Shown in pieces: positions 36,294 to 55,603 of a stretch of DNA of 64,000 bases. The position numbers and the translations under genes are program-made. The DNA lies in contig NW_005434612.1 in the NCBI RefSeq assembly GCF_000315625.1, positions 62,001 to 126,000 on the forward strand. The letters run 5' to 3'. Numbering within the stretch: position 1 is the stretch's first letter; each line of letters opens with the position of its first letter. The notes under the pieces are model-generated. The model worked only from the letters and a program-made list of their open reading frames with translations. It ran no database searches and was not told the DNA's origin. This stretch comes from Guillardia theta CCMP2712 (Eukaryota > Protista > Cryptophyta).

Positions 36294-36556
36294 TCTCACG
36301 CTTCTGTTTCAACACCCTCTCTGAAATAACCTTTATTTGACTGAAAAAGAAGGACAAAATGAACAACTGCCTCAAAAAAACCAAACAACGGAAAAAAAAG
36401 GTCAAATTGCGGATGTGATGATGCTTTAGTTGTCTTTTTTATCTTTTACAGTGACTCAGTCTATCGGACTTGTACTAGGGTAACAGGAGACTCGTGCTCC
36501 TTGAATTCCTCGTACTTCTACTATGCGGTTGAGTAAAGCTTCTCCCTTTCTTGCCC
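35256..36556. repeat. 1.3-kb direct repeat, copy A
   Basis: Near-identical to 45987-47326 from AAACAGA.GAGGACGAGACTTAG to TTCTCCCTTTCTTGCCC. The same ORF set appears twice in the track. Confidence 0.95.
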
Positions 36557-36862: not shown

Positions 36863-39800
36863 TTACTTTTTGTTCCTGCCTGTGCCATCCATTTTCTTCT
36901 TCTTTGTGACTTGCGTCTCTTTGTCCTAATGAAATACCATCACATCGCGTCAGTCATCGGACTTTCTAACCTCATCGTCTCCTCGCTTTCGACTTCTTGA
37001 TGTTTGCTGCTGTGGCTGATGTTTTTCTTCCTTTGCTGCAGTGGCGTGAGATACAAGCGGACAATCATGTCAAGCAGAAAGTGTCTCTTACCTGACTTCA
37101 CCAGCACGTCACAAGGCTTGGAAGCGATCGGAGGTCCTGCATACGAGGGTCTCGAGTCGACAAACTCAGCCGAGACCTGATGACTCCCGATCTCGCTGAG
37201 AGAGAAGGTGACGTGTACGCAGTTGCCGTCGAAGGTCTTGTACGACATGGGTATCCTCTGCTTTTCACAGTACAGCCTCACATCCGGCATGGTACTCGTA
37301 GACCAGTCGTCGAGCTTTCTTTGGTCTTCGGTGTGGAGTTGGATCAAAGCTTCGAAGTCTGCTGCTGCAAGAGCTGAGCCTTGTGCGTACTCAAGATGTT
37401 TCTGTCGGTCTTTCACCGTCATCGCGATCTGAATGACGGAGTTCCTAGCAGTGACGATGACATTGAAGGTGAACATCTGTACTCGTTTTGACAAGATTTT
37501 AGGGAAATACTCTCCAGCTGGAAGGGCTGGAATCGTGCTGAGCTTGAAAGCATCTCCCCTTGACTCATCTGATACTTTCTCAAGCTCCCTGCTCTGTTTG
37601 CCTACCTGCAGTATCAGCGGCTGATCCCATGCGGCTGACAAGTTGTTGTCCACACTGTCTGTAACGATGAACCTGATGTCACATTCGTACTCCGCCATGC
37701 TGGGGACCGAGAGGTTGACGAACGCTTGGCAGTCTGGCTGTACGCATATCTTGTACGGATCACCAGCTTTCAGGTCCAAGTCCAGCTCGATGGGCTTCAA
37801 GTTGTAACACTTTGTGCCACCTATACCTGTTTTCACGTTGAGCTTCAGCCCAAGCTTGAGCGTGCCCTTGGAGGGTTTACAGCGAATGAAAGCATTCCTT
37901 ACAGTGATCTTAGAGCCTTTGATCGTGATGTTCCTAAGGGCATCTTTGCCTTCTACCACTTTGCGGAAGTCGTCAGATAAAGTGACCGGGACCTCAAACC
38001 CATCTTCGCACGTGAAAGTGAACGAAGATATTTCGTCAGGATGTTGGTTAGTTATCGGTTCGATGTCGTATCCATCTCGATCCACTATGACTCCTTCCAA
38101 CGTGAACAAGTCTCCTGCTTTGATGCAAGAGGTGTTTCGTGGTAGAGAAATCTTCAGCTTCTCAGGCTCTCCGGGGGTTACCAGGACGTCAAGTTGGTAC
38201 TGAAACAGTCGCGTCTCCTCTGTCTTCGTCTGCTTCGAGCCTGCACAGGAGAAGACCGAGATGGTCTGCTTGGAATTAGATCGTACGTGCAACGGAGGCA
38301 GTGCAAAGACTTGTTCCTGACCGGCTTCATAGACTGGCAGCTGTGCATTCATCCAGCTCATTTCTACTTTCAAGTTTGACCTGCCGTCCGCAAAGTGCTG
38401 GCAGGGCTGGTTTGTCTCGTCAGCAGCCACAAGGTACAAATCTGATATCTTGTCGTTGTGCCGTGCGTTGAACGACACTGCTGCATTGTTGAGAGCCAAC
38501 TCGACTCCTGATCGGAAGAGCTTCATGCGCCTGGGAGTTCCGCTCGGCTTCAGGGGACGTGAGAACCTCTGATGCAAGATCGTCGTCTCGGTCTCGTGGA
38601 TGACATCTAAAGTCGCTTGAAGGCTCCGGGGAAACTCGTCGGAGTTGCAGAAGAACACATTGTCTGCCATCACATCAAGATCCAAAGTGTGCCGGAGGGA
38701 ATCGTGAAACACAAGGCAACGACCCGAGATGGCTTCTGGATTGAGCCTTTCAGCATCAGGTGCTTCGTTGTGTAAGAGTAAGCGAGGATGATCACTGCTC
38801 TCCGAGAAGTATTCAACATAGATTTCAGTCTCCGAAGATTGCTCGAAAATAGACTTGATCTGTCCAAACAACCGAACCTTAGGCCTTGTCTTACGACGTG
38901 CTCCAACGCCCAATTCTTGCTCCGCGATGAGCAATACACAATCCCCTGTTTGAAAGAAGCCATGCTCCCTGTGAAATACCCCGACCGGAGCGACTTGCTT
39001 GAGTATCATTTCTCTCCATCGACCCACGTCTGCCACGTCTGCTTCACTGACTACCGTCTGAGCTGTTGCCGTACCATTCGAGAACAAAGAGCTCGCACAC
39101 GAGCAGGTCAGGCGACATCTCCCTTTCCTTATCTTGTTTTCATTCCGCTGGCTCTCGCCGTGAAGCAGGAGGTCCGGGCTCATCACCACGAGCTTGCCTT
39201 GGTTTCCGTCGCACATGTTCCCGCTCGCGTCTTGAATGCTGACGTCGACTGGCCCGAGCTGTTGGTAGTTGATATACTCCTCCCAGTCAGCGTCGCACTG
39301 TATGGACGATGGCTGCCCATGCTGGACTTTGATCGAGACATTGAGCTCAACGACCTTCTGCTGATGAATGTCTGTGATGACTATGCGAGCAGGATACGTC
39401 CCGACGCCCCCATGAAGCACGCAGAGGTCTTGGATCCTTATGCTCCCAGCGTACTCAGGCGTGAAGGATAGCGAGACATCTTGAGCCCGAGCCTTGTCTA
39501 CCAGAATGTCAAGCGTGTGGACGCCGAGCTGGAGATCGATGCTATTGTTGTATTTGTCGTGCACCTGTACTTCTAAGGAGGTCGTTTGCCCGAGCTCACA
39601 ATGGATGCTCGGAGTGTCTGGTCTGAGCGATACCTTGTGCATCTCTGCTGGGGTGATGTAGAACGTCTCGGGCTCGCACGTGAACGGCGTCTGACCTGCA
39701 GCTGGCTCGAGGGACATCGTATACTGGCCTGCGACAGTCGCGAGCTTCTTCACTATCTTGTCAGGAAAAGACAGATGCCCATTGGACACTTCGAAGCTTT

Positions 39801-42800
39801 CCGAGCAATCTTGTGACGCCACTGTGACCTTGATCGGGATGTTTGTTTGAATAACTTCGCTATTTGAGTTCTTGCAGATAAACCTTGTAGTCGGTAACAA
39901 GCCAGCCTTCATGATGTGGTTGCGGAACTCGATAGCGACTGATCTGACTATCTGCTTCTCGTTCTTTGCTCTGGTAGCCTCGAACTCTTTGTTGCTGAGA
40001 GGCCTCATGGAATAGTTTTGTATTCTGAAGCGATTTGTTTTCGTCATGCTGTTGTCTGAAGCCAATAGAAGAAGCTCGACCTCCCCTGTTGGCAAGTTCA
40101 AGTCAAAGTGCTTATCTTGCAAGAACCTCTCGATCCTTCCAACGTGACTTTGAATCCTTGCTTTCTCCTTTGATTCTTTGTACAGCTCGACAATATCTCC
40201 GACTTGATATACATCATTCAAGAATATAATTCTGTCGTGCTGAGACATTCCTTCAGCATCTATGTACCTTGGGTTTTCGTCTTCGAAGGAGACCTCTGCG
40301 TCAAACTTGAGGTGACATTGTTTGAGCCAGTAATCGTATGCTTTTGCGAGGTCCTTCGAGTCAAGTGCATCTTGTAATTTCCTCATTTTGGTTTTGCCCA
40401 TGTTGAATGACCATTTGCTTGCCTCTGGCTCGATCCCTCGGTCTACAAAAAGAAGGCCGAAAGTCCTTGCATAGCATCGCTGCGGGGCAAGCGTCTTATC
40501 CCCCTCACGGTATCTCATGAAGCCAGGAACATAATGCTCCCCTGGAAGCCATCGTCCCATCCAGAACACCATGAAGCGGCGATCCAACGAGGTTGAGTGC
40601 CCATGCAGCTCGTCAACGTACGGGACTGTGTCCTTGTTGCCCTGGTTCGGAAAGTAGAATATCGCCCCCGTCGCGATCGAGCGCTTGGTGGGGTCAGAAT
40701 CGTCGGGGATCTCGACGTAGATGGGGAAGCAGTCCTTGGCGTCGTCGCTCAGCACTCGGTCAAGGCAGCACGTCGAGTCTGCAAGTCGATGCGGAGGGGC
40801 CGAGCTAGCAGAGCCTTGATGGATCCACTCGAACTCCAGGTCAATCTGCTCCGACATAGAGCCAGACTGGTCTCTACATTGCTTCAGCATCGTCTTCAAG
40901 CGGCTCATATCTTCATGAAACCTGTGTTCCCTTTGTGGTTTACGACCCGTTCGCTTCCCATCTACACTCGGCTGGTCTATCAGCCTCAGCACCTGGTCCA
41001 CAAACCTCTTCGCGCCTGCCTGCTCTCCTTCAAGGTACATGTAGTACATCGCTCGGATGTTGCTCAGGCAGAGCTTGAGAGCTGCCGCAGAGAAAGCTCC
41101 ATCGCTGGTAAAGAAATCAACCTTGAAGCCTTCTATGTCGATCTTGCAGAAGCTCGACGCGACGTCTTCGCCTTCCTGGAGAGACCTGATGCATCTAATT
41201 GCTTTCCAAGCCGATAAGGTTGAGTCTTCCACTACTTGCACAGTTCTGCTGTCTCGCGTCTTACTGCTCACAACATGTCTTGTTCCAAGGGCATTGCAAG
41301 CATTTTTCGCCCCCACGCCATATCGAGAAAAGGTACCGCTCAAATATCTCCTGAACGATGTGCAACCCTCGTCGTACAGCTCCTGCGTAGATGCGCGCTT
41401 TGACCCACATTGAAGCATTTCCTTGGGGTCTGAGCAGCCTATTCCATTGTCCACAAGATGAAAAGTGCCCCTTTGGAAGTTGAGTGTAACTTTGATAGTT
41501 TTGTTCTTGTCATATTGGTTGCAGAGTACACGTTGTATCGAGTTATCAAAAAGCTCCCCGATCGCTGTCAAGAAAGAGTAATTACTGATCAAACTTTCTA
41601 AAAAACGCATCCTGTCAAGTTTGATGTTGATGGTTGGCCTGTCTTTGAGATCACGGCAGAGGTCTGTTGGCTGAACGTCAGTTTTTGTTTTCGCAATGAA
41701 TCTTGTCTACAACACTTGCCTTCAGAAACCAGCACAAACTTTTTTCCTTCTTCATCGTCCATATCGAAGTCCGGTGAAGTAGCCTCCGAAAGGTCAGGTG
41801 ATGTTCGCAGCCTCCGTCCCTGATTGAGATTAAATCACGCCCGTCGTGGAGATCATTACGTACTGAAGTAGACTCATGTAGATTCATCTGTTCTTTCAAA
41901 TGCCCAATGAGTTGCTGGACGTCTTTGAATCGCCTCATCTCATCCAGACTCAGTCGGATGGGAGTACTGCAAATGAAACGATGAGAATACAATAAAATTG
42001 GAAGCAACAACCTCAAAAGTTTGTCCGTTTTGACCGCTTTGATAATGTTGTCATCAATCTGAGCCTCGATCACGGCCTTTTTTATGTCTGTCTCTGTATC
42101 GATCATTTCCGTTTTGACCACTTGCAACTTCATCTCAAGATCTAAGGCCGCAATATCATTTTTGTCACGAAAGATGATCAAAATGCCAATTGTACGACTG
42201 GAAGTCTCGAAACTTTCATTTATGCGAATGAGTTGAATTTTGCTATCATAAACATCTTTTGGCAGGGCAAGAGGCTTATCCTCATCGCCTACTGCATGCT
42301 CCAGAAAAGATACGGTCCCATCTTTGAAGCATCTCTGCCAGTCTCCACGACGATGGAGTGCATCATCTACTTCTGCGACATCGTAGATTCTCCTCTTCGC
42401 ACATGATAAGAGTTGCTTACAGCTTTCATCCATGAGGTCAGGATTCAAAACACCCTTCATTTTCAATTTAGATGAAATTGAAACATAATTGATGTAATCG
42501 CCAAGATCTGGCAAGTTTCCATCAATTGCCATCCTCTCTGCTGTTCGGATACATTCATAGAAATGATCAGGCATTGAAGATGATATTGATTCTATGAGAG
42601 TCGGGAATACTCCAACATCAAACATTATGCTTTCCCGAGTAATCTGATCTGCACCACACTCTTCCAACTTTGCCTCCGCAAATAATTGAAATATTCGAAC
42701 TGTTGAGTTCAAACTATTACTCACTCGTTCGAAGTATTTTGACTTTTTTTCGTGGAACCGCCCCAAAATCGCGATTCCTCTGTATTTCATCGACATTGCT

Positions 42801-42811
42801 TCATGATAGTC
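36863..42811 (-). CDS. Hinge-less SMCHD1-like GHKL ATPase paralog with extended N-terminus
   Basis: 37038-41600 is a high-identity inverted copy of 90-4689. ORF 41678..42841 splices in frame through introns 41820-41863 (GT-AG) and 41664-41719 (GC-AG). 3' introns 37036-37091 and 36926-36970 give a short basic tail ending KKKKMDGTGRNKK*. Confidence 0.8.
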
Positions 42812-43351
42812 CTGGAGAGATATGTTAAAAAAGAAGCCCACTCAAAACATTCTACCCTTATCTACATGATCTTTATCATTCTAAAATTCTTTTCGATCGT
42901 CACTCCGAAGAAACCTTGAAATCTTTGGGAAAGTCTATCTAATTTGACGTGTCAAAAGCCAATGCATTTCTTGTTGAACGTATGCAAAACATTCTCAAGC
43001 ATAGAAGCTGCAAAGAGGTGCATGCGCTCAAATCTTTCGTCCAATCTTGACACACCTGGTCTTCCAATTTCATCTTGAAAGTCTCTTTGTAGTCCTGAAG
43101 TCACTATGAGAGAAGAGACTAATTGATTGGGAAGTTATACCAGCTTGTTCTCCATTAGTGTAGTTGAGTATGGAAAAGAACTAAGGCTTTCCGGACAAAA
43201 AATAGATTCAATTATGCGACACAGTTGTAAACTTTAGATCATCAAACACTAACCTTTCGACTTCAGGGTTTTCTTGCTTGATGGTAATAGACATATATTT
43301 TGTAAAATCTTGCGTGCTATCTGCAATAACAATTATCACAAAGAATAAGTT

Positions 43352-45103
43352 TCACTTTATCACACCTAGAGTGATCAATTGTTGCCATGGAACAAACCTA
43401 AATTCTGGACAATCAAGAGCATTCTGTAGCTGTTCATTCATTTTCTTGACCCAACTCTGTTTCGACTTCCGCCAGTCATAATCATATTCTCGTTGTCCAA
43501 TCGTCCACCCCATATTGCTAACCCACGTATCAAAACTGAGAGGGGAAGCTTCTATTTTGAAGTCAGTCTTAGTTTTGACAATGAGACTGCCTTGTAGCTG
43601 TTGATTGTATAAGAAAGCTTCAAAGAAAATGCTGCTGATCTTTGTCATTCTAAACAAGACCACATAGCTTCCCGATTCCAAAGCTTTTTCCAAGATCCTG
43701 AAGGAGAGTAAAGGATGACCAGATTCTGAAGAGCCTAAGAGGCGAAATTTGTTAAGGAAAGCTTCAGCTTCATCGAGAATCTGTGCTTTTGACTTCTCCC
43801 TTTTATGAGGATAGCTCATTATTGTGTCCCAATATTCCATCAATGTGCTTTGAGATTCAATGTTTTGTTGCCCGATCTCCTTTTTAACTGTGTAATTCAC
43901 TATATTGATTATCAGACATCTTTCTACATTTTCATCCGACAAGTCGCAGTCGTTTTCTTCTTGCCACTTGCGAAAGGATACAGAGGAAATCTTTCTTGCT
44001 TTGAAATGTTTCTCGACCAGGCTAAAGAGACTCTCACCGAGATGTCCACCGAACGAAGCAACGTAATTCCGTACCATATCATCTAAGTACTCTGTGTCAT
44101 CGTATCTCAAAAACAAGAGCAGGAATAGTGAACAAATCCTCCATTTACAATTGGCACCATCAGCCAATGAGTGAGAGGATTTCATAAATTCTTCGATAAT
44201 GTTCTTCAAGTCCTTTTGGAAATGTTCAATGTGGTTTGAGGAATGACCAACTACAATCGCCTCTGCAATTTTTCCTGTTGCCTCAGTTGCTTGAAACCTG
44301 GATAGTTCTTGATTTGAAATGTTTTTTTCCAGAGCGGTGCTGATGCAATTCAAGAGCTGGGGTGTTCTGCCATTCTCAACGATACGCAGATCACTAGCAA
44401 TCTTATAACGATTGAATTCAGAAACATTTTCGCAATGGTTTGCAGCATGATCCAGCACTTCCTTCAATTCATTATTGATTCCAAAAACTCCTTTTATGTC
44501 ATGCATCAAGTATTTCATGAACTCTGAATCATCAAAAGTCTTTGAACCACTCGGGCATGTCATGTACAACGCCCATTGTTTCAGCTGAATATCCTCTGTG
44601 GGTTTACTGGGTTGTTCGACATTGTAGCCAGCCTTCACTGGAAAGTTCTCTATGATTTTCCTACAAGCATCGAAGATGATCAGCAGCCTTGCTTTGGAAT
44701 CCTTCTTGAAGGCTTCAGACCAAAATCTCAGAGCACTGCTGATGGAAAGTGCGCAAATATCTATAGAACCCAAGGAACTTAGATCGTCATTGCTGCAGTC
44801 TCCAGGAATCATGTAGACCTCTCCCGTTGGAAGTTGGGCGCCATGCCCAGCATAGAACAAAATGACTTGCTGTGGTGAATCTCTACTGAGATCTTTGAAA
44901 CCAGATCGCAGAAATCGTCCTAAATCAGCTGTATTCTGCACGTCAAGGTTCAACATTGATCTACAACGCTCAGCTTTGGATAACCTCTCATGGAATTCCC
45001 GAGCATCTCTGGCCGCACTCCTCAGCTTATCAAACTGTTTGTACTTGTCGATTCCTATGCACAATGCACCGACCTTCAATCGATCAGGCTGACTGTTCTG
45101 CAT
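43352..45103 (-). CDS. Caspase-like (peptidase C14) protease domain plus helical region; probably the 5' part of a longer spliced gene
   Basis: ALCIGIDKY...LRSAARDA, ILFYAGHG (catalytic His) and IIFDACR (catalytic Cys). Intron 43321-43365 removes the ORF stop and continues DSTQDFTKY... Confidence 0.85.
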   Translation of the reverse strand: MQNSQPDRLKVGALCIGIDKYKQFDKLRSAARDAREFHERLSKAERCRSMLNLDVQNTADLGRFLRSGFKDLSRDSPQQVILFYAGHGAQLPTGEVYMIPGDCSNDDLSSLGSIDICALSISSALRFWSEAFKKDSKARLLIIFDACRKIIENFPVKAGYNVEQPSKPTEDIQLKQWALYMTCPSGSKTFDDSEFMKYLMHDIKGVFGINNELKEVLDHAANHCENVSEFNRYKIASDLRIVENGRTPQLLNCISTALEKNISNQELSRFQATEATGKIAEAIVVGHSSNHIEHFQKDLKNIIEEFMKSSHSLADGANCKWRICSLFLLLFLRYDDTEYLDDMVRNYVASFGGHLGESLFSLVEKHFKARKISSVSFRKWQEENDCDLSDENVERCLIINIVNYTVKKEIGQQNIESQSTLMEYWDTIMSYPHKREKSKAQILDEAEAFLNKFRLLGSSESGHPLLSFRILEKALESGSYVVLFRMTKISSIFFEAFLYNQQLQGSLIVKTKTDFKIEASPLSFDTWVSNMGWTIGQREYDYDWRKSKQSWVKKMNEQLQNALDCPEFRFVPWQQLITLGVIK

Positions 45104-45306
45104 ACTCTCTTGAACTATGCCTGGTTGGAGGCTCTCATGACACCATGTGCCCAGCCCCGGGCATGGCTCTTACTGTCACAGCTGGGGAAAAAATAAGAAG
45201 AGCAGTGTGGTAAATATAAAACCAAGCCCACCTCAGGTATGTAAGTAATGAACATGACAAGACATCTACATACCCTATCTGATGCCTGACCTATTTACAC
45301 GTTGAT

Positions 45307-45906
45307 ATGGAGCCGATCACCCGTCGCCATCTTCGACCCGCTCATCGCTCGCCAACCACAACCAGGCTGGTCATCGATCCTGTCTTCCTCTCCAAGGTCA
45401 AGTCCTTGGCTGAGGCCTCCGATGGCCTCTTCCTTGCACAATCGGAGGCTGGTGACCCACAGTATGTACGCTGGCGAGATGCGATGGCAGACCCGACGCT
45501 GGAGAGCACGATCTGCTGGGCGAAGATCAAGAACGCCACCCGAGCTATCGAGAAGCTCGTGCGGTCCTACGACTTCTGCGTCTACAAGCTCTTAGATGTG
45601 GTACGACAGTCTATCATCTTCAAGGACCTCGACCATCTGTGCGACTGCCTGGACAAGATTGCCAGGGACCCGGAGATCGAAGTTGTACGAATCAAGAACA
45701 GGCTGGATCCAGACTTCGACAGCAAGATATCGGGGGGCTACCGAGACATTGGGATAAACCTGCGCATCGTCAGCACCCAGACGAAGAAGGAGGGAGTGGA
45801 GGGGCATATCTGCGAGCTCCAGCTTCTGCTTGAAGACTTCCACAAGCTCAAAACCCTCGAAGGGCACAAACGGCACGTGCAGTTCCGAAACCTCCGATGC
45901 GAGTGA
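45307..45906 (+). CDS. Stand-alone RelA/SpoT-like nucleotidyltransferase ORF (199 aa), chimeric copy of the 3' domain of the 47833-51617 gene
   Basis: Motifs KIKNATRAIEK, LLDVVR, VRIKNR, GGYRDIGIN and HICELQL are intact. The ATG comes from unrelated upstream DNA. It could be an unexpressed fragment. Confidence 0.6.
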   Translation: MEPITRRHLRPAHRSPTTTRLVIDPVFLSKVKSLAEASDGLFLAQSEAGDPQYVRWRDAMADPTLESTICWAKIKNATRAIEKLVRSYDFCVYKLLDVVRQSIIFKDLDHLCDCLDKIARDPEIEVVRIKNRLDPDFDSKISGGYRDIGINLRIVSTQTKKEGVEGHICELQLLLEDFHKLKTLEGHKRHVQFRNLRCE

Positions 45907-45986
45907 TGCCTTAAACATCCGTAATTCGTAACCGTAGACTACTTCGTAAGAATTTCGTATGATTTGCGGGAGAGGTGGTTATGAAA

Positions 45987-47326
45987 AAACAGAGGAGGAC
46001 GAGACTTAGAATTGCCATTGGGCTTTAGTTCTATTCGTCTGCCTCCCCCCTATCGATCGTCCCTGTAGTGATCGTAAGTTACAACTTTCGCTTGCAGAGA
46101 GAGAACAGACCTCCCAGGCTTGAAAGTTTCCTGACGAGTCTTGTCTTCCGATGATCTTCTGCTCGAGCAATGGAATTGCGTTCACGTTGGAAACGATACT
46201 CACTCGGCTTGTTGAATGATTCTGTTGCGCGGAATTTTCTCGCAAGAGGATTTGGCTGTCGTGACTGAATTGTGGGAGAATTTTTCTCGATGACAGACGC
46301 TTTCAAGATGACAACATTCAGGGAATTCACTAGGATCATTCGAGCATGATCATACCTTCTCTTCCCCTCCGTCTGCATGCTTGCTTTGTTGTTTCTTGAA
46401 CTCTCGGATGTATCTGGTGAAAGTATCAACCATCTCAACACCTAACATAAACAAGCAAAGCAGGAAAGAACCTCTTCAGAGAGACATCTGTTCTTTCAAT
46501 CTGCCTCTGACAAACAGCGTCTCTCTCACGATGAGAAGAGCCGATAAGAATCTTGTCGATGCTGCCCTTGAACAGCTTGGCAAACCTCTCCGAATTCTTT
46601 TCTGCTGCTCTCATGGAGTCGTAGGTCTGCTTTCCTATCAGCTGATGGCCGCTGGATTGAGAGATTGCCACTGCATTCCCAAACGCTGTTGATAAGTTGA
46701 ACTCCACATGCTTGTAAAACGTCAGACAAGGCAAACTGAACGACCGGCTACCTCCAGGCCGTAGAGTTGAGACCTGAGTCTGTCAAACTTGTCTTGGTGT
46801 TCGATGGGCTCTAGGCGTTTCATGGAGCTTCTTAGTATCATCTCGCTTGTTCTCTGCCTGAGTCCAATCGAAACCTTTCAAAGTAAAATGTCAACAAAAA
46901 TGGCTGGCATGAACCTTACACAAGTTATGAGCAATGGACAAGGATGCTGCACAACCGCTGTGTTGCTTTTCAAACTTCTCTCTCTCCTCTGTGATGTCCT
47001 ACTTCTCATCTTCTCTTCCAACATTCTCACGCTTCTGTTTCAACCACCCGCTGTGAAATGAAAAACTGCCTCAAAAACCAACCAAACAAGGGAAAAAAAA
47101 AGGTCAAATTGCTGGTTGTCTTTTTTATCTTTTACAGTGACTCAGTGTCTATCGGACCAGCTATCGGACAGTTATAGTCTCGGCCCTTACTCAGTCTATC
47201 GGACCAGCTATCGGACAGTTAGTCTCGGCCCTTACTCAGTCTATTGGTCTATACAGTGACAGTGTGCCTCTTGAATTCCTCGTACTTCTACTATGAGGTT
47301 GAGTAAAGGTTCTCCCTTTCTTGCCC
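45987..47326. repeat. 1.3-kb direct repeat, copy B (3'-truncated duplicate of the 34398-36293 gene plus its upstream region)
   Basis: Matches 35256-36556. It also carries a ~46-bp tandem repeat (ACTCAGTCTATCGGACCAGCTATCGGACAGTTAGTCTCGGCCCTT) at about 47140-47245 that is absent from copy A. Confidence 0.93.
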
Positions 47327-47832
47327 TGGAGGCTTTCCTCCCGCACGTTTGAATCCGCGTAATTCCGTATCCTTTCATTTAAGTACTCTAGACAAACATC
47401 TATTTTAAATTGCCCCTTCTATTTGATATACGGCGCAAATGGGACTTGACTGTAAAACTATTATTCAGAGTTATTGCATTGTACCACAAAGTACCCACCC
47501 ACTTTAGATCAAATTGTGGTGTTCACACCCCTTCACTTTGGGTTTAAAATTTCGAAAATAAGATTTACACAAAAAAAAATCTGGTCATGAGAAAATTTAC
47601 GTCCCTTGAGTTTTTGCAACCTATCATTGGTTGCCCACCCCCTCTTTTCCCATTCTTTGCTCTGATATAGCATAGGGTCCGAACGAATCTAGAGTTGCAG
47701 GAGTATGCTATATGTCCTAGGAACGGTCCTAGAAAGCTCCTAGGGATCACTACACGCAGCCAGTCAATAAGATTATAAACGCAGCCATCATGCTGGGGAA
47801 GGGGATTTGAGGTATGTGAAACGAGCGTCAGC

Positions 47833-50800
47833 ATGTCTGCAAGGGACGGGGCTCACAAGATTGAGATCGAGGCTGAAGATGCTCAGACCGAGCCCATCCT
47901 GCTTCTGACTCCAAGGAGAATGGATTTCAAGCCAGGCTTCTCACATTTCTACATGCATGTATGCGGTGACTTCCTTCAGAGAAGCACTGCGGAGAGAAAA
48001 GTATACAAGCTCAATCCGTGGCTCATTTTGTTCTCCCATGAGCCTCTTTCTGCCGTACTCACCTTGCTTCCTGTACAAATCATCTTCATCATAGTTGGCA
48101 TGCTGTGGATCATCTTCGAGTCGATATCTCTCAGGCACATTGAATCTACAGGCTACTTCTCTCTGTCTGTTGAGCAGGGAAAAATAGTATCGGAGTTTCT
48201 ATTCCAAGATTATCTTCCAAAGAGCCATCTTGCCTGCACTTGGGAGTTGTCCCTTCAATTAGCAACCAGATACATCATTGGGGCTTCTTTGATGATTTCC
48301 GGCTTCCTGGCGATCAGGAACAAGTTTCATCGATCAAAGCTGGTAGATCCCTCGGTCTGACTCTCATACTGCCAAGTAACGCACATGTGCAGGTCTTGAT
48401 CTTTGCAGGCTTGCTCGATGCGCTGCTGAACTTGCTCATCTTCTTCCGAATGTCGTCCGAGGGCTATGAAGAGACTGCGTTGGGGGGAACACGACACCAG
48501 TTCATGATCTATGCCATCACGGTAGTTCGTGAGATCTGCTAATAGTCAACCGTTGACTCCGTGTATTATCAGGATCTCTTCTTCTTTCCAGCTCCAATGC
48601 TCTTCAGCGAAATGTACGTGGTCGAGCAAGTCAGCCTAGCGCACATCACCATCTTTGGTTCTGCGTTGGGAGCAGGAGTCGTGAGATATGAGAGCATTGT
48701 CATGTTGGCGGTCACTATTCTCTTTCTGGTCTATCGCGAGCTCACAAGATCGAGAACTTTGAGCGAAGCTTTGCACAGTTCTGGTGTGTTTGAGGAGGAA
48801 TGGAATGAGGTGAAGGGCAGCCATGCCATGTTTCGTTTGACCAACGCTCTACGAAATGTACGGGGATGGGGGCCCTACGGACCAACCTTCATCTTGCCTT
48901 CCTCGGATCCCAGGCTTGTCCCTGGCGAATCTGAAGTAGACAAGGAAATTGACGACGAGAAACTTCGAAGAAGCAACCTTGATCAGCTGTACGCCCAGGC
49001 TCTGGTCATCGATCCTGTCTTCCTCTCCAAGGTCAAGTCCTTGGCCGAGGCCTCCGATGGCTTCTTCCTCGCGCAATCGGAGGCTGGTGAGCCACAGTAT
49101 GTACGCTGGCGAGATGCGATGGCAGACCCGACGCTGGAGAGCACGATCTGCTGGGCGAAGATCAAGAACGCCACCCGAGCTATCGAGAAAGTCTTGTTGC
49201 TCTGCGACACTCAAGTGTCCCGCCTTACAGATGTGGTACGACAGAGCATCATCTTCAAGGACCTCGACCATCTGTGCGACTGCCTGGACAAGATTGCCAG
49301 GGACCCGGAGATCGAAGTTGTGCGAATCAAGAACAGGCTGGATCCAGACTTCGACAGCAAGATATCGGGGGGCTACCGAGACATTGGGATAAACCTGCGC
49401 ATCGTCAGCACCCAGACGAAGAAGAAGGGAGTGGAGGGGCATATCTGCGAGCTGAGGCTGGCTTTGATGTCGCTTCATCGGAAGACTAGTACAGGCATGT
49501 TTCAGAGGTACCAACGGGTGAAGCAGGTTCTTCGCTTCCGCACAGGGACGTCTCAGCTGGCGAGAAAGTATGCGGATGCTCCGTTGAGGACGCGGCTGTG
49601 GCGCTTGATGTTTCCGATAGCTCCAATACAAGCCGTATCGCCTTCTGATGTCTGGACGTCGCTCCTGCTGTGTAAGGCATCCACGGACAAGTCGGATGAT
49701 GCTCTCACAATCTTCAAGGGGCTGTTCCCAGGGAACATTCTCGATGATTATCTCTTCACCAGCGCACATGGTGTAGTCGATGCGGCCACATCTACCATCA
49801 TGTACTCGTCGACGCCGCTCAGAAGCGCTTCCTACAAGCCCTTCTTCCAGGTGTTGCTCTTTGTTATTTCGGGCGCCTTTGCATACTCAATCGCCAGTAA
49901 TTCATGGTTGAGTGCGCGTGGAGTGATAGCGAATGGGAAGTTCAGCGCTAGGCACTATCGTCTAGATGTGAATGCCGATCCGTCGATTGCTGTTTCTGCA
50001 CAATCACAATCCTTCCCGAATCGCTCGTTTGCGATGACAAGGGATTCTTGTCGGCGATTCTATCCATCCGCCATCTCGGTGGCAAACTCTTCTATATACT
50101 ACACCTTCGACGAGGACATAGTCGCGAATGGATGGCAGATTGACCTCAGCGCGACTCTCTCTGCTCTTGCCTTCCATCCTTACAATTTTTCTTTATTTCG
50201 TTTTGAGGGGGGCTCAGACCCGCAGCACAGCTTGCGCGAGGACTGGGTCTTGGTAAATAATTTTACGTGCGCAGAGCATCCTGAAATCTCCTTCTGCGAA
50301 GCAAATGGAACAGTAGCTGACGGGCAAACCATCTCCTTCGACCTCCGAGCATCTTGGAAGGACAACCTTTTTTTTTCCTTCTCTACCGTTCAGGCTTCAT
50401 CTTGTTTTCTTGGGGGTGTATTTTCTGTTCTCCGAAAACCCAATCTAGTCAAATTCTGTATCGGGTCCCCGTTCCATGTTGTCGGTGTAGCGGAAATCGC
50501 AGTGGCATTTCCTTTATCTCTCAAGGACAACAGCCTGATGACTCTTTCTTGGGGAATAGCCGATTTCAGCCTTGGGATGTTAATGCAATTCAGAGAGCGA
50601 TACTCGCTACAGTATCTGCCTCTCTATGTGATCTTCACTACTTTCTTCAACATCGCTTTTTCGACCTCTTGGTTTGAAGATCCTTTTGATGCATCGTATT
50701 TTCCGTTTACAAGCTATGTCCTAAGTGGCCTCTGGCTCTACTTTCGGTTCAAGAGGGATTATCTCTACCGCAAGGCTGTGAAGCAAGTCGAGCCCGACCG

Positions 50801-51617
50801 GTTGAAGTACGACGAGTGCTGGAGCAGGTACATCTCGAATGAGCCCTGCAGGAAGCGACTCGAGAAGATCAGTGCGCTGTGTCGTCCTCACCTTTCAACC
50901 CGCAAAGTACAGCAGAAGTGTCGCAGAGATCCTCAACTCCTGCGCCGAGACATCGCCATCTTCGACCCGCTCATCGCTCGCTATAGCAACGCAGGTGGCA
51001 GTATCTTCGCTCCCGTCAAGTGCGGCGGCATCGAGTACGGTCCCTTGTACTCTCTCGACCAGCTGTACGCCCAGGCTCTGGTCATCGATCCCGTCTTCCT
51101 CTCCAAGGTCAAGTCCTTGGCCGAGGCCTCCGATGGCTTCTTCCTCGCGCAATCGGAGGCTGGCGAGCCACAGTATGTACGCTGGCGAGATGCGATGGCA
51201 GACCCGACGCTGGAGAGCACGATCTGCTGGGCGAAGATCAAGAACGCCACCCGAGCTATCGAGAAGCTCGTGCGGTCCTACGACTTCTGCGTCTACAAGC
51301 TCACAGATGTGGTACGACAGTGCATCATCTTCAAGGACCTCGACCATCTGTGCGACTGCCTGGACAAGATTGCCAGGGACCCGGAGATCGAAGTTGTGCG
51401 AATCAAGAACAGGCTGGATCCAGACTTCGACAGCAAGATATCGGGGGGCTACCGAGACATTGGGATAAACCTGCGCATCGTCAGCACCCAGACGAAGAAG
51501 AAGGGAGTGGAGGGGCATATCTGCGAGCTCCAGCTTCTGCTTGAAGACTTCCACAAGCTCAAAACCCTCGAAGGGCACAAACGGCACGTGCAGTTCCGAA
51601 ACCTCCGATGCGAGTGA
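47833..51617 (+). CDS. Multipass membrane protein with two RelA/SpoT-like synthetase domains (~1227 aa)
   Basis: Exons 47833-48342, 48393-48521 and 48573-51617 (both introns GT-AG, phase 0). Hydrophobic block, domain 1 (about 48978-49480), TM plus a loop with five N-x-S/T sequons, second hydrophobic block, domain 2 (about 51054-51614). Confidence 0.8.
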
Positions 51618-51791
51618 TGCCTTAAACATCCGTAGTTCGTAACCGTAGACTACTTCGTAAGAATCTCGTATCATTTGCGCATAAGTGTGACCTGCCGCGG
51701 TCGCACTCGGCGGGCCGCAGTGCGGGCCCCGCCGGGCCCAGTCCTCACTCCCCCAAGGGGTACTACGCACTCCTCAGCTCATGAAACTGTT

Positions 51792-51973
51792 ACTTGTCGA
51801 TTCCTATGCACAATGCACCCCAGGCTTCAATAGATTAGTTAGCCTGTTTGACTGTTCTGCATATTCTCTAACCAAGTCCACCTCAGGTATATAAGTAATG
51901 AACATGACAAGACATCTACATACCCTATCTGATGGCTGACCTATTCGTACGTTGATATGGAGCCGATCACCCG
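51792..51973 (-). pseudogene. Decayed remnant of the caspase-like gene 5' end and its upstream region
   Basis: TACTTGTCGATTCCTATGCACAATGCACC...TGACTGTTCTGCATA matches 45042-45104. ACCAAG.CCACCTCAGGTAT...GGAGCCGATCACCCG matches 45221-45323. Confidence 0.85.
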
Positions 51974-52261
51974 AAGACGCGTTACAAAACAGTTACTAAG
52001 GAATGGAGAGGAACAAATGGTGAATGGTGAAGGGCGCGAAGAAAGCAATCAGGCAGAGAGTTGTCGTGCAGCCACAGAGAGAGCAGAATGAAAGGCGTGT
52101 GAAGGCAGAAACAATACATATCGAGATGGAGGATTGGAGGACAGATTGGAGGATGGTTGGGAGTGTAAAGACTAATCCTTGCCTACCGTCGGCAAAAACC
52201 GGAGTGTGGTGATGATTGTTCTGACTTCTTTATCTTCCAGGTATTTCACTTGGCTGGAAGG

Positions 52262-55200
52262 ATGAGCTTCCTGACCGGGGGCTCTACGCCTGTCAAAGCC
52301 GGTGAAGTCGGCGTGGGATGCGCTCTGGGGCAGAACGAAGCAGGAGAGGTGGTTGTGAAAGGCCTGGCGCATGGTGGCCCTTGCCACCTCTGCTGTCAAG
52401 TAGCGATAGGAGACGTTGTCGTGAGTGTGGATGGATCTCTCATCAATGGGGATGTCAGGCTAGCAAAGGCACTCTTCCTCGGGGAGGACGGGACGGGCGT
52501 CACGCTGACTCTCAGGAGGAACGGCATAGCAAGGAATGTTCACCTGCTGCGAGGGAAACCGATCGAGCATCGCCCTGTCAAGGAAGGAGAGCTCTGCGGC
52601 ATCGGAGTGACTCTCAACTCTGTACGGGGAGGACTTGCGATATCCAAGATCGCGCCTGGAAGTCCGGCGCAGCTCTCAGGAGAGTTGCAGACCATGGACG
52701 TGATCATGAGCGTGAACGGAACGGACGTGCAGGGCAAGTCAGTCCAGGACGTGGTGCCGATGATGGTCGGTCAACCTGGAACTCGTTTGACATTGAGCAT
52801 CATCAGAGGTTGCGACTCCTTGGTCTCGATCGTCCGTGGCTGTTGACGTCTGTACTTTGACCAGGCCGCGGAGCGAAACGACAGATTGATATGGTACGAG
52901 CTCACAACCTGGAGCAGGCGGCTATCCCAAAAGCCTCACAATACCGCTACAATGCATTGGTGATAGAGAAACATCTTGTGCTGCTAGTTGCTCACTGGTG
53001 GGCTCGTAGGTGGAGCAACAGGCTCTGTCGTATACCTGGCTTCGCCGAATGCATCGCAAGATCTCCAAGTCGGTTCATGGAGGGCAGGTTGGAAGGAAGA
53101 TGTCGCAATTTTCATGCAGTGCGTCTGATAGTTTGTCAGGGCACTGTCAATGAAGTGACCTTTGACGGGATCGCCAGTCCTATTCGAATTGCGTTGAAGG
53201 TGGGCAGTTTTGGTTCCATCAGTGCAATCTAATGTTGTGATGCATACAATTTCTTGCAGGTTGTGTATCAGAGAGGTTCAAGCTTCAAATCAGCGGAAAG
53301 ATCGCTCTGGTTGAATGTGGACAACCATCCCCACATCTTGCCTCTACTTTTTACCGCGGGGCCGAACATGTACAACATTTGTTCATTGAGCATCAAGTGT
53401 TTGATCAAGCACCTCCAGGCTCTTTATGCCTTTCATGGAGCTTGCTTCAGTCACCGACTGGCTGTCGCAGTCATCGGGTAATCTCTTTCCTTGCAGCCTC
53501 GCCCTGCTTAAGAGGCTCTGCAGAATCAAAATCCTTGCCGTCAGAGGACTTGCGGCAAGTTCACCAGATGATCGGACTTCAGGTAACTCAAGAATTCAAG
53601 TTCGTCCGACCCATGCAATCCTTTGACTTCACTTGTGCAGGTCTCATGGGCCTTAGAGCACATGCATAAAGTGGGTTTTCGGCTCTAGACCGCTCAGTTA
53701 ACCTGACTTTGCTGCACAGGTCGGAACGCTACATCTGGACATGAAGCCCAACAATATCCTTGTGCGGCTCCGCGGTGATGGACGGATGAGTCTCTGGAAG
53801 CGGCTGCATTGCTTGGGTATACAGAATGAAGGAACGCTAGAAGCTGTGACCTTGCTCCCGTAGTTTGCGATTTCGGGCTGGCAGCTGTCAACATTGAAGG
53901 CTCGGCAACAGGAAGAGGAGGAACGCCAGGTGAAGATCAGACAATCACCTCAAATTCTCACCCGTTTCTCTCCCCCATCGCCACTTTGACACTTTGACAC
54001 TTCTCCCTGTAGGGTTTTGGGCTCCTGAACTGATCCCCTTGGATGGAAGCGGCGTCCCCGTGCCTTACTGGACGGAGGCCTGCTCAGATCCCCCTCCTCA
54101 CTGCAGAGCCAACATTACTGACAAGGCAGACACTTGGATGTGGGCCACCACAATGCTGGCGATCATGGATCGTCTGGAGAGGATGAGGGGCCAGGGGTAT
54201 GCTGCTTTCACTGCCCAGCTTGCAAGGGGAGATGGATTGGATCGGTTGATCTCCAACTGTTTGAAACCTCAGCCTCAAGATCGGCTCCCCATTTCTATCG
54301 TCTCTTTGACGATGCAGAGGTTGATGAGAGACAAAGGGCTCGATGTGTTCAAGCCGATGGACGAGGATAAGTCGGTCATTGAGTACGCCCGCGCCGGCTA
54401 CACTCTTTGCATGAGCCTGATGGGGCAAGACGATCCGCAGACCTGGGCTGCGACGGAGAGGCTGGTTCGCGTGCTGCGGACTCATGGAGACTACAAGGAG
54501 GCTGAGATGCTCTGCAGCAATGTCCTCGAGCGAAAGATCAAATGTGAGGCAGAACCCTCCTCCATTGCTCGGACTCAGCGCCAGCTGGGGGGTATCTTGG
54601 ACGATCTCGGGCGATATGACAGTGCCTCCAAGTGCTATCGCGGAGCTCTGGAGGTCCAAGTGCGGTCACTTGGCTCGAACCACATCGACGTGGCGAGCAC
54701 GAAGGACAGTCTTGGAGTGACGCTTTGGCGACAAGGCAAGTTTGATGAAGCACTCAAGCTCTATGACGAGGCTCTTGTCGTGCGAGAGTCGGTCCTGGGC
54801 AGCGAGCATGTTCTGGTCGCTAAGACGATTGTGAACAGAGCTAACGTTTACTTCCGACAAGGACAGTTCATGCGAGCCTTGGCTGACTACAGTCGGGCGC
54901 TGGAGATCGAGAAGCGAACACTGGGCGAGGAGCACGTATTGGTGGCAAAGACAAAGAACAACATGGGCGAGGCCCTTCGAGTTGAAGGCAAGTATGAAGA
55001 AGCGCTTCAGCTCTATCAAGAGAGCCTCGTGGTCTTGTCCAAGGTGCTCGGAAACTCGCACGTGCTGGTAGCCAACACCAAGAACAACATCGCGGGTATC
55101 TTTTTGAAGCAGGACAAGTGCGACGAAGCTTTGCAGTACTACATGGAGTCGTTGGACACCAAGTTGAAGGTGTTGGGCCCCGGTCACGCTGACGTCGCAA

Positions 55201-55603
55201 ACACGATCGAGAACATCGGAGTCATCTTCGCACAGCAGGGAAGGCATGATCACGCGCTGGAGAAGTTCAACGAAGCTCTCTCCATCCGCAGCATTGCCCT
55301 CGGCCCCGATCATCTCGACGTGAGCTCGACACAGTACAAGATGGCTCTGGTGTATGAGGAGAAGCATGAGTATAAGACTGCCCTCCCGCTCTGCGAGCAG
55401 GTCTGAGAAGTTCCTTCCCTCCTGAAAAGTTCCTTCTTTTGCTGACAGACTTTCAGGCCCTCCAGAAAGCGATGAAGGCCATGGGGGCGGAGCACCCTGA
55501 AGTGCAGAAGAGGAAGCTGGTGCGAGATCGCCTGATGGTATTGTGTTATGCTGAGATATCCGTGTGGACTAACATGCCATGGCAGCACAAAGCTGTAGGA
55601 TGA
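52262..55603 (+). CDS. PDZ-PDZ-protein kinase-TPR protein, multi-exon
   Basis: Two PDZ domains (GVGCAL...IGDVVVSVDG; GIGVTL...SPAQLSGELQTMDVIMSVNG). Kinase motifs IALK, HLDMKPNNILV, CDFGLA and GTP|GFWAPE on small exons. About seven 42-aa kinesin-light-chain-type TPR repeats (LG.EH..VA.T.NN.G). Confidence 0.85.

What the first reader, a model, noticed from the sequence alone, without database searches (positions are those of the whole stretch)
43352..45906. Head-to-head caspase-like protease and newly built stand-alone alarmone-synthetase-like ORF
Seen: the caspase-like ORF (ATG at 45103, minus) and a 199-aa RelA/SpoT-like ORF (ATG at 45307, plus) diverge from a 203-bp spacer. The small ORF is a chimera. 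Its ATG and first codons come from the caspase upstream DNA, then 29 bp from 50953-50981 read in a shifted frame, then a ~90-bp deletion with filler and a 2-bp loss that land in frame with the catalytic domain. All motifs are intact and all TM segments are gone. Known: ~200 aa is the size of bacterial small alarmone synthetases, and bacterial defence systems pair nucleotide-signal synthases with protease effectors. Inference: this is a synthase-effector pair on a shared bidirectional promoter.
Basis: partly seen in the sequence, partly recalled or inferred. Interest (0 to 1): 0.85.

Follow-up and report, generated by a model that had tools for sequence, protein, structure and literature searches.

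The report
Young chimeric alarmone-synthetase-like gene beside caspase
A recent local DNA rearrangement in this alga fused a copied promoter and start codon to one catalytic domain of a neighbouring two-domain membrane protein. The result is a transcribed 199-residue soluble alarmone-synthetase-like gene, and its position next to a caspase-like gene looks like an accident of that rearrangement, not a conserved enzyme-effector pair.

Summary
A caspase-like ORF (ATG 45103, minus) and a 199-aa ORF (45307-45906, plus) diverge from a 203-bp spacer.

The small ORF is a mosaic:
- duplicated upstream DNA that carries the ATG
- 29 bp identical to 50953-50981, read in another frame
- 9 bp of filler where the parent has 89 bp
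- a 2-bp loss
- a 97% copy of the C-terminal domain of the neighbouring 1018-aa ORF

The domain is a very divergent RelA/SpoT-type synthetase. Pfam PF04607 misses it. A family profile hits Tas1 and YwaC, and a pLDDT-93 model matches small alarmone synthetases at Z 12. All catalytic residues are kept.

RNA-derived contigs from two studies cover 45297-45904 without a mismatch, so the ORF is transcribed. The caspase transcript ends near 45149.

Substitutions give dN/dS of about 0.25-0.3 (p 0.01-0.04). This is weak evidence of constraint.

The synthase-effector reading is not supported. The genome has about 45 synthetase-like genes and about 25 caspase-like genes. No other pair lies closer than 62 kb. 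The shared promoter is one of two copies, and the other sits in front of a PDZ/TPR gene.

Best reading: a young, expressed chimeric gene. Its function is unproven.

The parts
43366..45103 (-). Caspase-like gene, first coding exon. The unspliced ORF would run to 43352. Peptidase C14 domain at residues 13-157, with the His87/Cys147 dyad in YAGHG and FDACR.
   Evidence: ORF. Pfam PF00656: 41.3 bits against a cut-off of 21.4. Dyad positions. RNA-type contigs X1 and X2 cover it and end at 45147/45149.
43321..43365 (-). 45-nt GT..AG intron that removes the stop codon of the 583-aa ORF. The reading frame continues to a stop at about 43210 if there is no further intron, and the X2 contig runs about 1.9 kb further.
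   Evidence: Joint 43320/43366 is seen in X1 and X2 but not in the DNA run X12. Translation of the spliced form.
45104..45306 (.). 203-bp divergent spacer. RNA contigs leave about 45150-45296 uncovered, so this is a candidate bidirectional promoter.
45220..45323 (+). Duplicated upstream block U (94% identical to 51870-51973). It supplies the promoter-proximal DNA, the ATG at 45307 and the first 17 nt of the ORF.
   Evidence: Only two copies exist in the genome.
45307..45906 (+). 199-aa chimeric ORF. Residues 1-18 are novel and residues 19-199 form the RelA/SpoT-fold synthetase-like domain. Conserved residues: K75, R79, K83, D97, R100, D121, R146, E170, H187, R194.
   Evidence: An identical 199-aa protein is in the public protein sets (P0001).
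45324..45352 (+). 29-bp piece identical to 50953-50981 of the parent gene, read here in a shifted frame.
45353..45361 (+). 9-bp filler that takes the place of 89 bp of the parent (50982-51070).
45362..45968 (+). 97% copy of the parent's C-terminal domain plus 62 bp of its 3' flank, with a 2-bp loss near its start.
45987..47326 (+). A further duplicated block, 94% identical to 35256-36556, that abuts the small gene.
47833..51617 (+). Parent gene. It encodes a membrane protein with two synthetase-like domains, starting at residues 140 and 832 of the 1018-aa ORF 48561-51617. A probable upstream exon lies at 47833-48360.
   Evidence: The C21 paralogue has the same upstream-exon layout.
51766..51973 (.). 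Second copy of the caspase 5' fragment (51766-51869, 80%, decayed) plus block U (51870-51973). The same ATG at 51957 opens a 44-codon ORF upstream of the PDZ/TPR ORFs.

Best explanation
The 199-aa ORF is a young, lineage-specific chimeric gene made by a complex local segmental duplication.

Origin (shown). A copy of a short promoter block was joined to a partial copy of the 3' end of the neighbouring gene. That block carries a start codon and 17 coding bases, and its other copy sits in front of a PDZ/TPR gene. The neighbouring gene encodes a membrane protein with two RelA/SpoT-fold domains. Deletions at the joint (89 bp replaced by 9 bp, plus a 2-bp loss) put the borrowed ATG in frame with the C-terminal catalytic domain and removed every membrane segment.

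Expression (shown). The gene is transcribed.

Product and mechanism (inferred). The product is a soluble single-domain pyrophosphokinase of the RelA/SpoT type. The basic residues K75, R79 and K83 would hold the ATP phosphates. D97 and E170 would hold Mg2+. The beta-gamma pyrophosphate would be transferred to the 3'-OH of an acceptor, which could be a purine nucleotide or an RNA end. The acceptor is unknown.

The caspase neighbour (inferred). The head-to-head position with the caspase-like gene is a by-product: the duplicated promoter block is the caspase gene's own upstream region. The two genes may be co-expressed, but nothing shows that they work together.

Whether the new protein has a selected function is open, at roughly even odds.
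For: Mosaic structure and its sources.

The two-domain, roughly 1000-1100-aa architecture is the ancestral one. There are 87 domain matches in the genome, mostly paired inside open frames of 1019-1134 aa. Two-domain relatives are also common in public data.

Fold and motifs:
- The family profile hits Tas1 (6ox6, E 1.2e-3) and YwaC (6fgk, E 3.8e-3), with the D, YR, E and H motifs aligned.
- The AF2 model has pLDDT 92.8.
- The 50 Foldseek hits listed are all RSH synthetase domains.
- VIA-align gives Z 12.2 against SAS1/SAS2, with unrelated nucleotidyltransferases at Z 7.8 or below.
- Invariant residues are retained.

Transcription:
- X2 contig covers 45297-45874 at depth 164 with 0 mismatches.
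- X1 contigs cover 45308-45734 and 45705-45904 with 0 mismatches.
- The same runs carry the spliced caspase form that the DNA run lacks, so they are RNA-derived.

Constraint: 6 nonsynonymous against 7 synonymous differences from the parent, dN/dS 0.25, p 0.014. With the C40 paralogue as outgroup, 12 of 13 changes fall on the small-gene branch, 6 synonymous and 6 nonsynonymous, p 0.035.

Pairing is unique to this locus.
Against: - The strand and the exact 5' end of the transcript are not shown. Contigs carry no strand, and the raw-read RNA run gave only 8 reads.
- No evidence of translation.
- The selection signal rests on 13 substitutions and may be distorted by gene conversion in the parent. 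The parent's N and C domains are 94.7% identical.
- The ORF lacks the family-wide (S)LDQLYxQA start of helix 1, which could impair folding or activity.
- An in-frame, stop-free joint would arise by chance roughly one time in eight. This is my own estimate, not a tool result.
- The order of the rearrangement events is not resolved.
Confidence: 0.72

Rival explanations
1. Expressed relic. The ORF is a functionless by-product of segmental duplication. It is transcribed only because it landed behind a copied promoter, and it is on its way to decay.
For: - The region is full of duplications about 94% identical: 90-4689 with inverted 37038-41601, 35256-36556 with 45987-47326, and block U.
- The conserved start of helix 1 is lost.
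- Nearly all substitutions since the duplication lie on the small-gene branch.
- Other truncated or fragmentary copies of the domain exist in the genome, at C13:133057-133591, C72, C255 and C49.
Against: - The 199-codon frame is intact.
- All catalytic residues are retained.
- dN/dS is 0.25-0.29, below the neutral expectation (p 0.014-0.035).
- Contig depth is higher than that of the neighbouring caspase gene in two RNA data sets.
Confidence: 0.35
2. The small synthetase makes a nucleotide signal that activates the neighbouring caspase-like protease. The pair would be a eukaryotic analogue of bacterial signal-synthase/protease defence systems, co-regulated from one bidirectional promoter.
For: - Head-to-head layout with both genes transcribed and contig ends about 147 bp apart.
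- The caspase dyad is intact.
- The synthetase motifs are intact.
- Both genes belong to lineage-expanded families, as immune-type genes often do.
Against: - No other caspase-family gene lies within 62 kb of a synthetase-like gene.
- The adjacency is only as old as the rearrangement, at about 3-6% divergence.
- The promoter block's other copy serves a different gene.
- No SAVED, CARF or other nucleotide-sensor domain was found in the caspase-like protein.
- No protein among the ten long relatives scanned carries a caspase or any other Pfam domain.
Confidence: 0.05
3. Modulator of the membrane paralogues. The freed domain pairs with the catalytic domains of the two-domain membrane proteins, as a soluble partner or a dominant-negative subunit. 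It would not act as an autonomous enzyme.
For: - The parent has two homologous domains in one chain, a layout in which domains often pair.
I did not test this.
- The small protein is 97% identical to the parent's C-terminal domain.
Against: - No evidence that the domains dimerise.
- In the two RNA data sets the parent gene's 5' half had no contigs while the small gene did. A gap in contigs proves nothing.
- No complex prediction was run.
Confidence: 0.08

Closest known systems
Bacterial small alarmone synthetases (SAS1/YjbM, SAS2/YwaC, RelP; PF04607)
   Same: A single-domain protein of about 200 aa with the RSH synthetase fold (Z 11-12, rmsd 2.5-3.1 Å over 139-145 residues). The ATP-binding basic residues, the catalytic Asp and Glu, and the YR and H motifs align.
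   Different: - Sequence identity is only 12-17%, and PF04607 does not detect it.
- It is eukaryotic and nuclear-encoded.
- It is not ancestrally stand-alone. It was cut out of a two-domain multi-pass membrane protein a short time ago.
- Product and oligomeric state are unknown.
Toxic RSH relatives: Tas1 ((p)ppApp synthetase, type VI effector), FaRel2 and CapRel (tRNA pyrophosphokinases)
   Same: Tas1 is the best sequence-profile hit (E 1.2e-3) and has the highest identity among the VIA-align matches (21%, Z 10.8). CapRel scores Z 10.7. These enzymes show that the fold can use acceptors other than GDP/GTP.
   Different: There is no secretion, immunity or antitoxin context here. No C-terminal sensor like CapRel's is present. 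Substrate was not tested.
The two-domain membrane RelA/SpoT-fold family of this genome and other protists
   Same: The small ORF's domain is a 97% copy of the C-terminal domain of one member, the 48561-51617 ORF. The family has about 45 genes here and more than 1600 representative clusters in public data, mostly eukaryotic. Earlier notes of this scan describe it.
   Different: All membrane segments, the N-terminal domain and the first turns of helix 1 are lost. A new 18-residue N-terminus and a foreign promoter are gained.
Young chimeric genes made by partial duplication and promoter capture (for example Drosophila jingwei; from my own knowledge)
   Same: A partial copy of a parental gene is fused to unrelated 5' sequence that supplies the promoter and start codon. 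It is transcribed and diverges faster than the parent.
   Different: Here the donor pieces all lie within about 10 kb. The joint includes filler and micro-deletions typical of error-prone repair or template switching. No retroposition is involved.
Bacterial signal-synthase plus protease-effector defence systems (CBASS, and type III CRISPR with SAVED/CHAT or Lon-type proteases)
   Same: A nucleotidyltransferase-type gene sits next to a caspase-fold protease gene.
   Different: Co-occurrence is not conserved. No sensor domain was found on the protease. The synthase belongs to a different superfamily from CD-NTases and Cas10. The setting is a eukaryotic nuclear genome.

Membership tests
RelA/SpoT homologue (RSH) synthetase superfamily | Significant match to Pfam PF04607 (RelA_SpoT) | tested here: not met
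   No hit at E <= 0.1 for the ORF. Only 4 of 43 family members hit, best E 2.8e-4.
RelA/SpoT homologue (RSH) synthetase superfamily | RSH synthetase fold | tested here: met
   AF2 model with pLDDT 92.8. Foldseek's 50 listed hits are all RSH synthetases, best E 2.7e-5. VIA-align Z 12.2, clearly above other nucleotidyltransferases at Z 7.8 or below.
RelA/SpoT homologue (RSH) synthetase superfamily | Catalytic and ATP-binding motifs: basic residues of Syn1, Asp of Syn2, YR of Syn3, Glu of Syn4, His of Syn5 | tested here: met
   Family-invariant K, R, K, D, R, R, E, H align with the YwaC motifs. They are present in the ORF as K75, R79, K83, D97, R100, R146, E170 and H187.
RelA/SpoT homologue (RSH) synthetase superfamily | ATP-dependent pyrophosphate transfer to a 3'-OH acceptor | not testable with these tools
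   Needs an enzyme assay.
Bacterial-type small alarmone synthetase (stand-alone SAS) | Soluble single-domain protein of about 200 aa | tested here: met
   199 aa with no hydrophobic segment.
Bacterial-type small alarmone synthetase (stand-alone SAS) | Descent from stand-alone SAS lineages | tested here: not met
   It derives from the C-terminal domain of a two-domain membrane protein (97% DNA identity).
Signal-synthase plus protease-effector pair (defence-system logic) | Recurrent co-occurrence of the two gene families | tested here: not met
   87 domain matches and 31 caspase-family matches in the genome. The only adjacent pair is this one, and the next closest is 62 kb apart on C136. No related genomes were available.
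Signal-synthase plus protease-effector pair (defence-system logic) | Effector carries a nucleotide-sensing domain | tested here: inconclusive
   No SAVED, CARF or similar match in Pfam, PADLOC or NCBIfam. The atlas search of residues 160-583 was uninformative. The C-terminal 400 residues remain uncharacterised.
Signal-synthase plus protease-effector pair (defence-system logic) | Co-expression from a shared divergent promoter | tested here: inconclusive
   Both genes are covered by RNA-type contigs in the same two runs, with ends at 45147/45149 and 45297/45308. Strand and co-regulation are not shown.
Peptidase C14 (caspase/metacaspase) | Pfam PF00656 above the gathering score, and a His-Cys dyad | tested here: met
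   41.3 bits against a cut-off of 21.4. H87 lies in YAGHG and C147 in FDACR.
Young chimeric gene | Identified parent, read-supported joint, transcription | tested here: met
Young chimeric gene | Purifying selection on the new copy | tested here: inconclusive
   dN/dS 0.25-0.29, p 0.014-0.035, from 13 substitutions.

The most novel reading that the evidence does not exclude
The freed soluble synthetase makes a nucleotide (or modifies an RNA) that switches on the divergently transcribed caspase-like protease. This would be a newly assembled eukaryotic signal-synthase/protease module, analogous to bacterial cyclic-nucleotide defence systems and caught at its birth.
Probability: 0.05. Interest if true: 0.85.

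Novelty: new variant of a known kind. Interest (0 to 1): 0.5.

Why it matters
This alga carries dozens of membrane proteins with two very divergent alarmone-synthetase-like domains. Pfam does not cover the family, and my searches found no paper on it. The 199-aa gene is a natural experiment in which one catalytic domain has been freed of all membrane parts and is expressed. That makes it the easiest entry point for asking what these eukaryotic enzymes produce: (p)ppGpp- or (p)ppApp-like nucleotides, modified RNA, or something else. It is also a clean, datable example of gene birth by partial duplication plus promoter capture in a protist. The more exciting claim, a synthase-protease signalling pair, is not supported by the comparative evidence.

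Tried and rejected
- Direct Pfam, NCBIfam and PADLOC scans of the 199-aa ORF gave no meaningful hit.
- phmmer of the ORF against PDB sequences found nothing. Only the family profile worked.
- The single-sequence AF2 model was useless, with pLDDT 38. The alignment-based model was good.
- The look-up of encoding contigs for P0001 returned nothing, because records of this genome are withheld. I could not see the public gene models of the neighbours.
The bacterial distribution was therefore not examined.
- Pfam scan of ten long single-domain relatives, to look for informative fusions, found no domain at all.
- The atlas search of the caspase C-terminal part was uninformative.
- Three literature searches found papers on canonical plastid RSH enzymes and bacterial toxSAS/Tas1, but nothing on this protist family. 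One further search was rejected for its syntax.
- The raw-read RNA run X19 gave only 8 reads, so it could not give strand or ends.
- A 2289-nt X1 contig shares only 45875-45906 and then diverges. I considered it as a possible splice and rejected that, because the same loose end stands in the DNA run X12. It is a paralogue.
- I did not run complex prediction. I do not claim that the two proteins bind.
Full report
**Setting**

The window is C62:62001-126000 of an 87-Mb, 669-contig assembly. Several features mark it as a eukaryote:
- very long ORFs
- short GT..AG introns
- an SMCHD1-like ORF and PDZ/TPR ORFs
- no tRNA genes in the window

Earlier notes of this scan name the organism as the cryptophyte Guillardia theta. 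That fits what I remember of that assembly's size, but I did not test it.

**The observation**

The ORFs, the ATG codons and the 203-bp spacer are as stated.

- 45362-45968 is a 97% copy of 51071-51679. That source is the C-terminal domain, plus 62 bp of 3' flank, of the 1018-aa ORF 48561-51617.
- Just upstream lie 29 bp identical to 50953-50981.
- The parent's intervening 89 bp are replaced by 9 bp (45353-45361).
- A CT dinucleotide is missing just before the domain.
- The 29-bp piece is read in a different phase from the parent.

The ATG and the first 17 nt lie in a block (45220-45323) that has exactly one other copy in the genome, at 51870-51973 with 94% identity. There it is preceded by a decayed 104-bp copy of the caspase gene's 5' coding end (51766-51869, 80%). 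The same ATG (51957) opens a 44-codon ORF upstream of PDZ- and TPR-containing ORFs.

Downstream, 45987-47326 is a 94% copy of 35256-36556.

So the small gene is a patchwork of at least three nearby sources. It sits in a region with several duplications of similar age, including an inverted 4.6-kb duplication of the SMCHD1-like gene. The most economical history is as follows.
- The ancestral state was a head-to-head caspase/PDZ-gene pair.
- The shared upstream block was duplicated when a segment carrying the synthetase-like gene and a truncated extra copy of its 3' end came to lie between them.

I could not resolve the order of events.

**What the domain is**

Pfam does not recognise it in the ORF or in the parent. 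An exhaustive phmmer search found 1641 cluster representatives at E <= 0.001. Many are 1000-1700-aa proteins with two matching stretches. The atlas clusters are eukaryotic, with ciliates and diatoms among the few labelled members.

A 43-sequence alignment (A2) has ten invariant residues. Its profile hits only two PDB sequences:
- the (p)ppApp synthetase Tas1 (E 1.2e-3)
- the small alarmone synthetase YwaC (E 3.8e-3)

The RSH motifs align between family and YwaC: DvvRqsivF with DIAGVRIIC, GYRd with GYRS, cEvQL with AEIQI, and gHkrY with EHKIY.

With that alignment AlphaFold gives a confident model, pLDDT 92.8 and pTM 0.87. The 50 hits Foldseek lists are all RSH synthetase domains. VIA-align gives these scores:

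| Match | Z |
|---|---|
| SAS1 / SAS2 | 12.2 |
| exported SAS | 11.2 |
| Tas1 | 10.8 |
| CapRel | 10.7 |
| nearest unrelated nucleotidyltransferases (TdT, pol mu) | 7.8 or lower |

By the Pfam definition the protein is not a detectable member.

The small ORF retains every invariant residue and has no membrane segment. It lacks the widely conserved (S)LDQLYxQA start of the first helix.

**Family context**

The genome holds 87 matches to the domain. Most are paired within open frames of about 1020-1130 aa, which implies roughly 45 two-domain genes. The two-domain membrane architecture is therefore ancestral and the 199-aa form is derived.

A second, independent derivative exists on C21. It has an N-terminal membrane part plus a single hybrid domain, N-domain-like at its start and C-domain-like at its end. 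It looks like a deletion between the two internal repeats.

**Expression and the joint**

I laid four runs on 43301-49300 at 99% or greater identity.

X1 and X2 come from different studies. Both carry a 45-nt GT..AG (minus-strand) splice at 43321-43365 that the 2011 run X12 lacks. X1 and X2 are therefore RNA-derived, and X12 is DNA.
- In X2 one contig covers 45297-45874, at depth 164 with no mismatch.
- In X1 two contigs cover 45308-45734 and 45705-45904, with no mismatch.

The parent differs at about 16 positions and lacks the joint, so these contigs come from the small gene. The transcript is colinear with the genome.

The caspase contigs end at 45147 and 45149, which leaves about 147 bp uncovered between the two genes. 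This fits a divergent promoter. Contigs give no strand, however, and the one raw-read RNA run was too thin.

X12 record 9 (45255-45396) bridges the 45323/45324 joint in DNA. It may come from the sample that was assembled, so it is not independent.

The splice also shows that the caspase-like gene does not end at 43352. The frame continues, and the X2 contig runs about 1.9 kb further, towards the 387-aa ORF 41678-42841.

**Is the new gene constrained?**

Over 178 aligned codons the small gene and the parent's C-terminal domain differ at 13 sites, 6 nonsynonymous and 7 synonymous. That gives dN 0.015, dS 0.058 and a ratio of 0.25 (binomial p 0.014).

With the C40 paralogue as outgroup, 12 of the 13 changes map to the small gene's branch. 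They split 6:6 against a neutral expectation of about 3.4:1 (p 0.035).

Synonymous divergence (5.8%) matches the divergence of the flanking non-coding duplicates (5-6%).

This is modest evidence for purifying selection on the new copy. It rests on few sites. It could also be distorted by gene conversion: the parent's own N and C domains are 94.7% identical over 476 bp.

**Is it a synthase-effector pair?**

The caspase-like protein is a credible protease:
- PF00656 scores 41.3 bits against a cut-off of 21.4.
- The dyad is H87 and C147.
- It belongs to a family with 31 matches in the genome, including a tandem array on C97.

Against the pair model:
- Comparing coordinates of the two families, the only adjacent pair is the one in this window. 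The next closest is 62 kb apart (C136).
- The adjacency is no older than the rearrangement.
- No nucleotide-sensor domain is detectable in the caspase-like protein.
- Ten long relatives of the synthetase-like domain carry no Pfam domain, so there is no informative fusion.

I therefore rate the functional pairing as unsupported, at about 5%, but not excluded. Co-expression from the shared spacer is plausible.

**Verdict**

- Observation: confirmed.
- The RelA/SpoT-like nature, the chimeric origin and transcription: supported.
- The synthase-effector inference: not supported.

The most likely account is a young, expressed chimeric gene encoding a soluble RSH-fold pyrophosphokinase domain. I put its having acquired a function at about even odds.

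Its main value is practical. It offers a naturally soluble, single-domain representative of a large, unstudied eukaryotic branch of the alarmone-synthetase superfamily. 

Noticed in passing
window 90-4689 (+) and 37038-41601 (-): A 4.6-kb inverted duplication, 94% identical, of a gene of about 1560 aa with a GHKL ATPase plus an SMCHD1 S5-like domain (PF13589, PF22899). Both copies keep long open frames.
   Followed up: partly
window 48978-49453 and 51054-51529: The N- and C-terminal synthetase-like domains of the parent gene are 94.7% identical at the DNA level. In most paralogues the two domains match the query at clearly different identities (for example 61% against 54% at C13). This suggests intragenic gene conversion or a recent internal duplication.
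   Followed up: partly
L004 1498-3141 (-) = G000:C21, about 37.8-39.5 kb: A paralogue with the N-terminal membrane part and a single hybrid domain, N-domain-like at its start and C-domain-like at its end, 80% identical to the query. It looks like a deletion between the two internal repeats, and so a second, independent route to a one-domain protein. P0151 (an ENA fragment, 81% identical to the query) resembles this copy.
   Followed up: partly
window 43321-43365 (-) and 41678-43320: A 45-nt intron removes the stop codon of the 583-aa caspase-like ORF. The RNA contig continues about 1.9 kb further, so the real protein is longer and may include the 387-aa ORF 41678-42841, which has no Pfam match.
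   Followed up: partly
G000:C97:155000-232500: A tandem array of about ten caspase-like paralogues, each about 625 aa and 28-30% identical to the window's copy. This is a lineage-specific expansion.
   Followed up: no
window 15630-17180: Perfect or near-perfect (95-100%) tandem repeats of 120-420 bp inside long overlapping ORFs on both strands (14005-18119).
   Followed up: no
window 47800-49300: The parent gene's 5' half had no contigs in the two RNA-type runs that covered the small gene well, although the DNA run covered it. The derived gene may be expressed more strongly than its parent, but a gap in contigs proves nothing.
   Followed up: no
window 52250-52846 and 53994-55406 (+): ORFs with PDZ-like sequence and kinesin-light-chain-type TPR-like repeats, judged by eye and not scanned, lie downstream of the second promoter copy. 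An atlas structure cluster also shows relatives of the synthetase-like domain fused to TPR_10/TPR_12 repeats.
   Followed up: no
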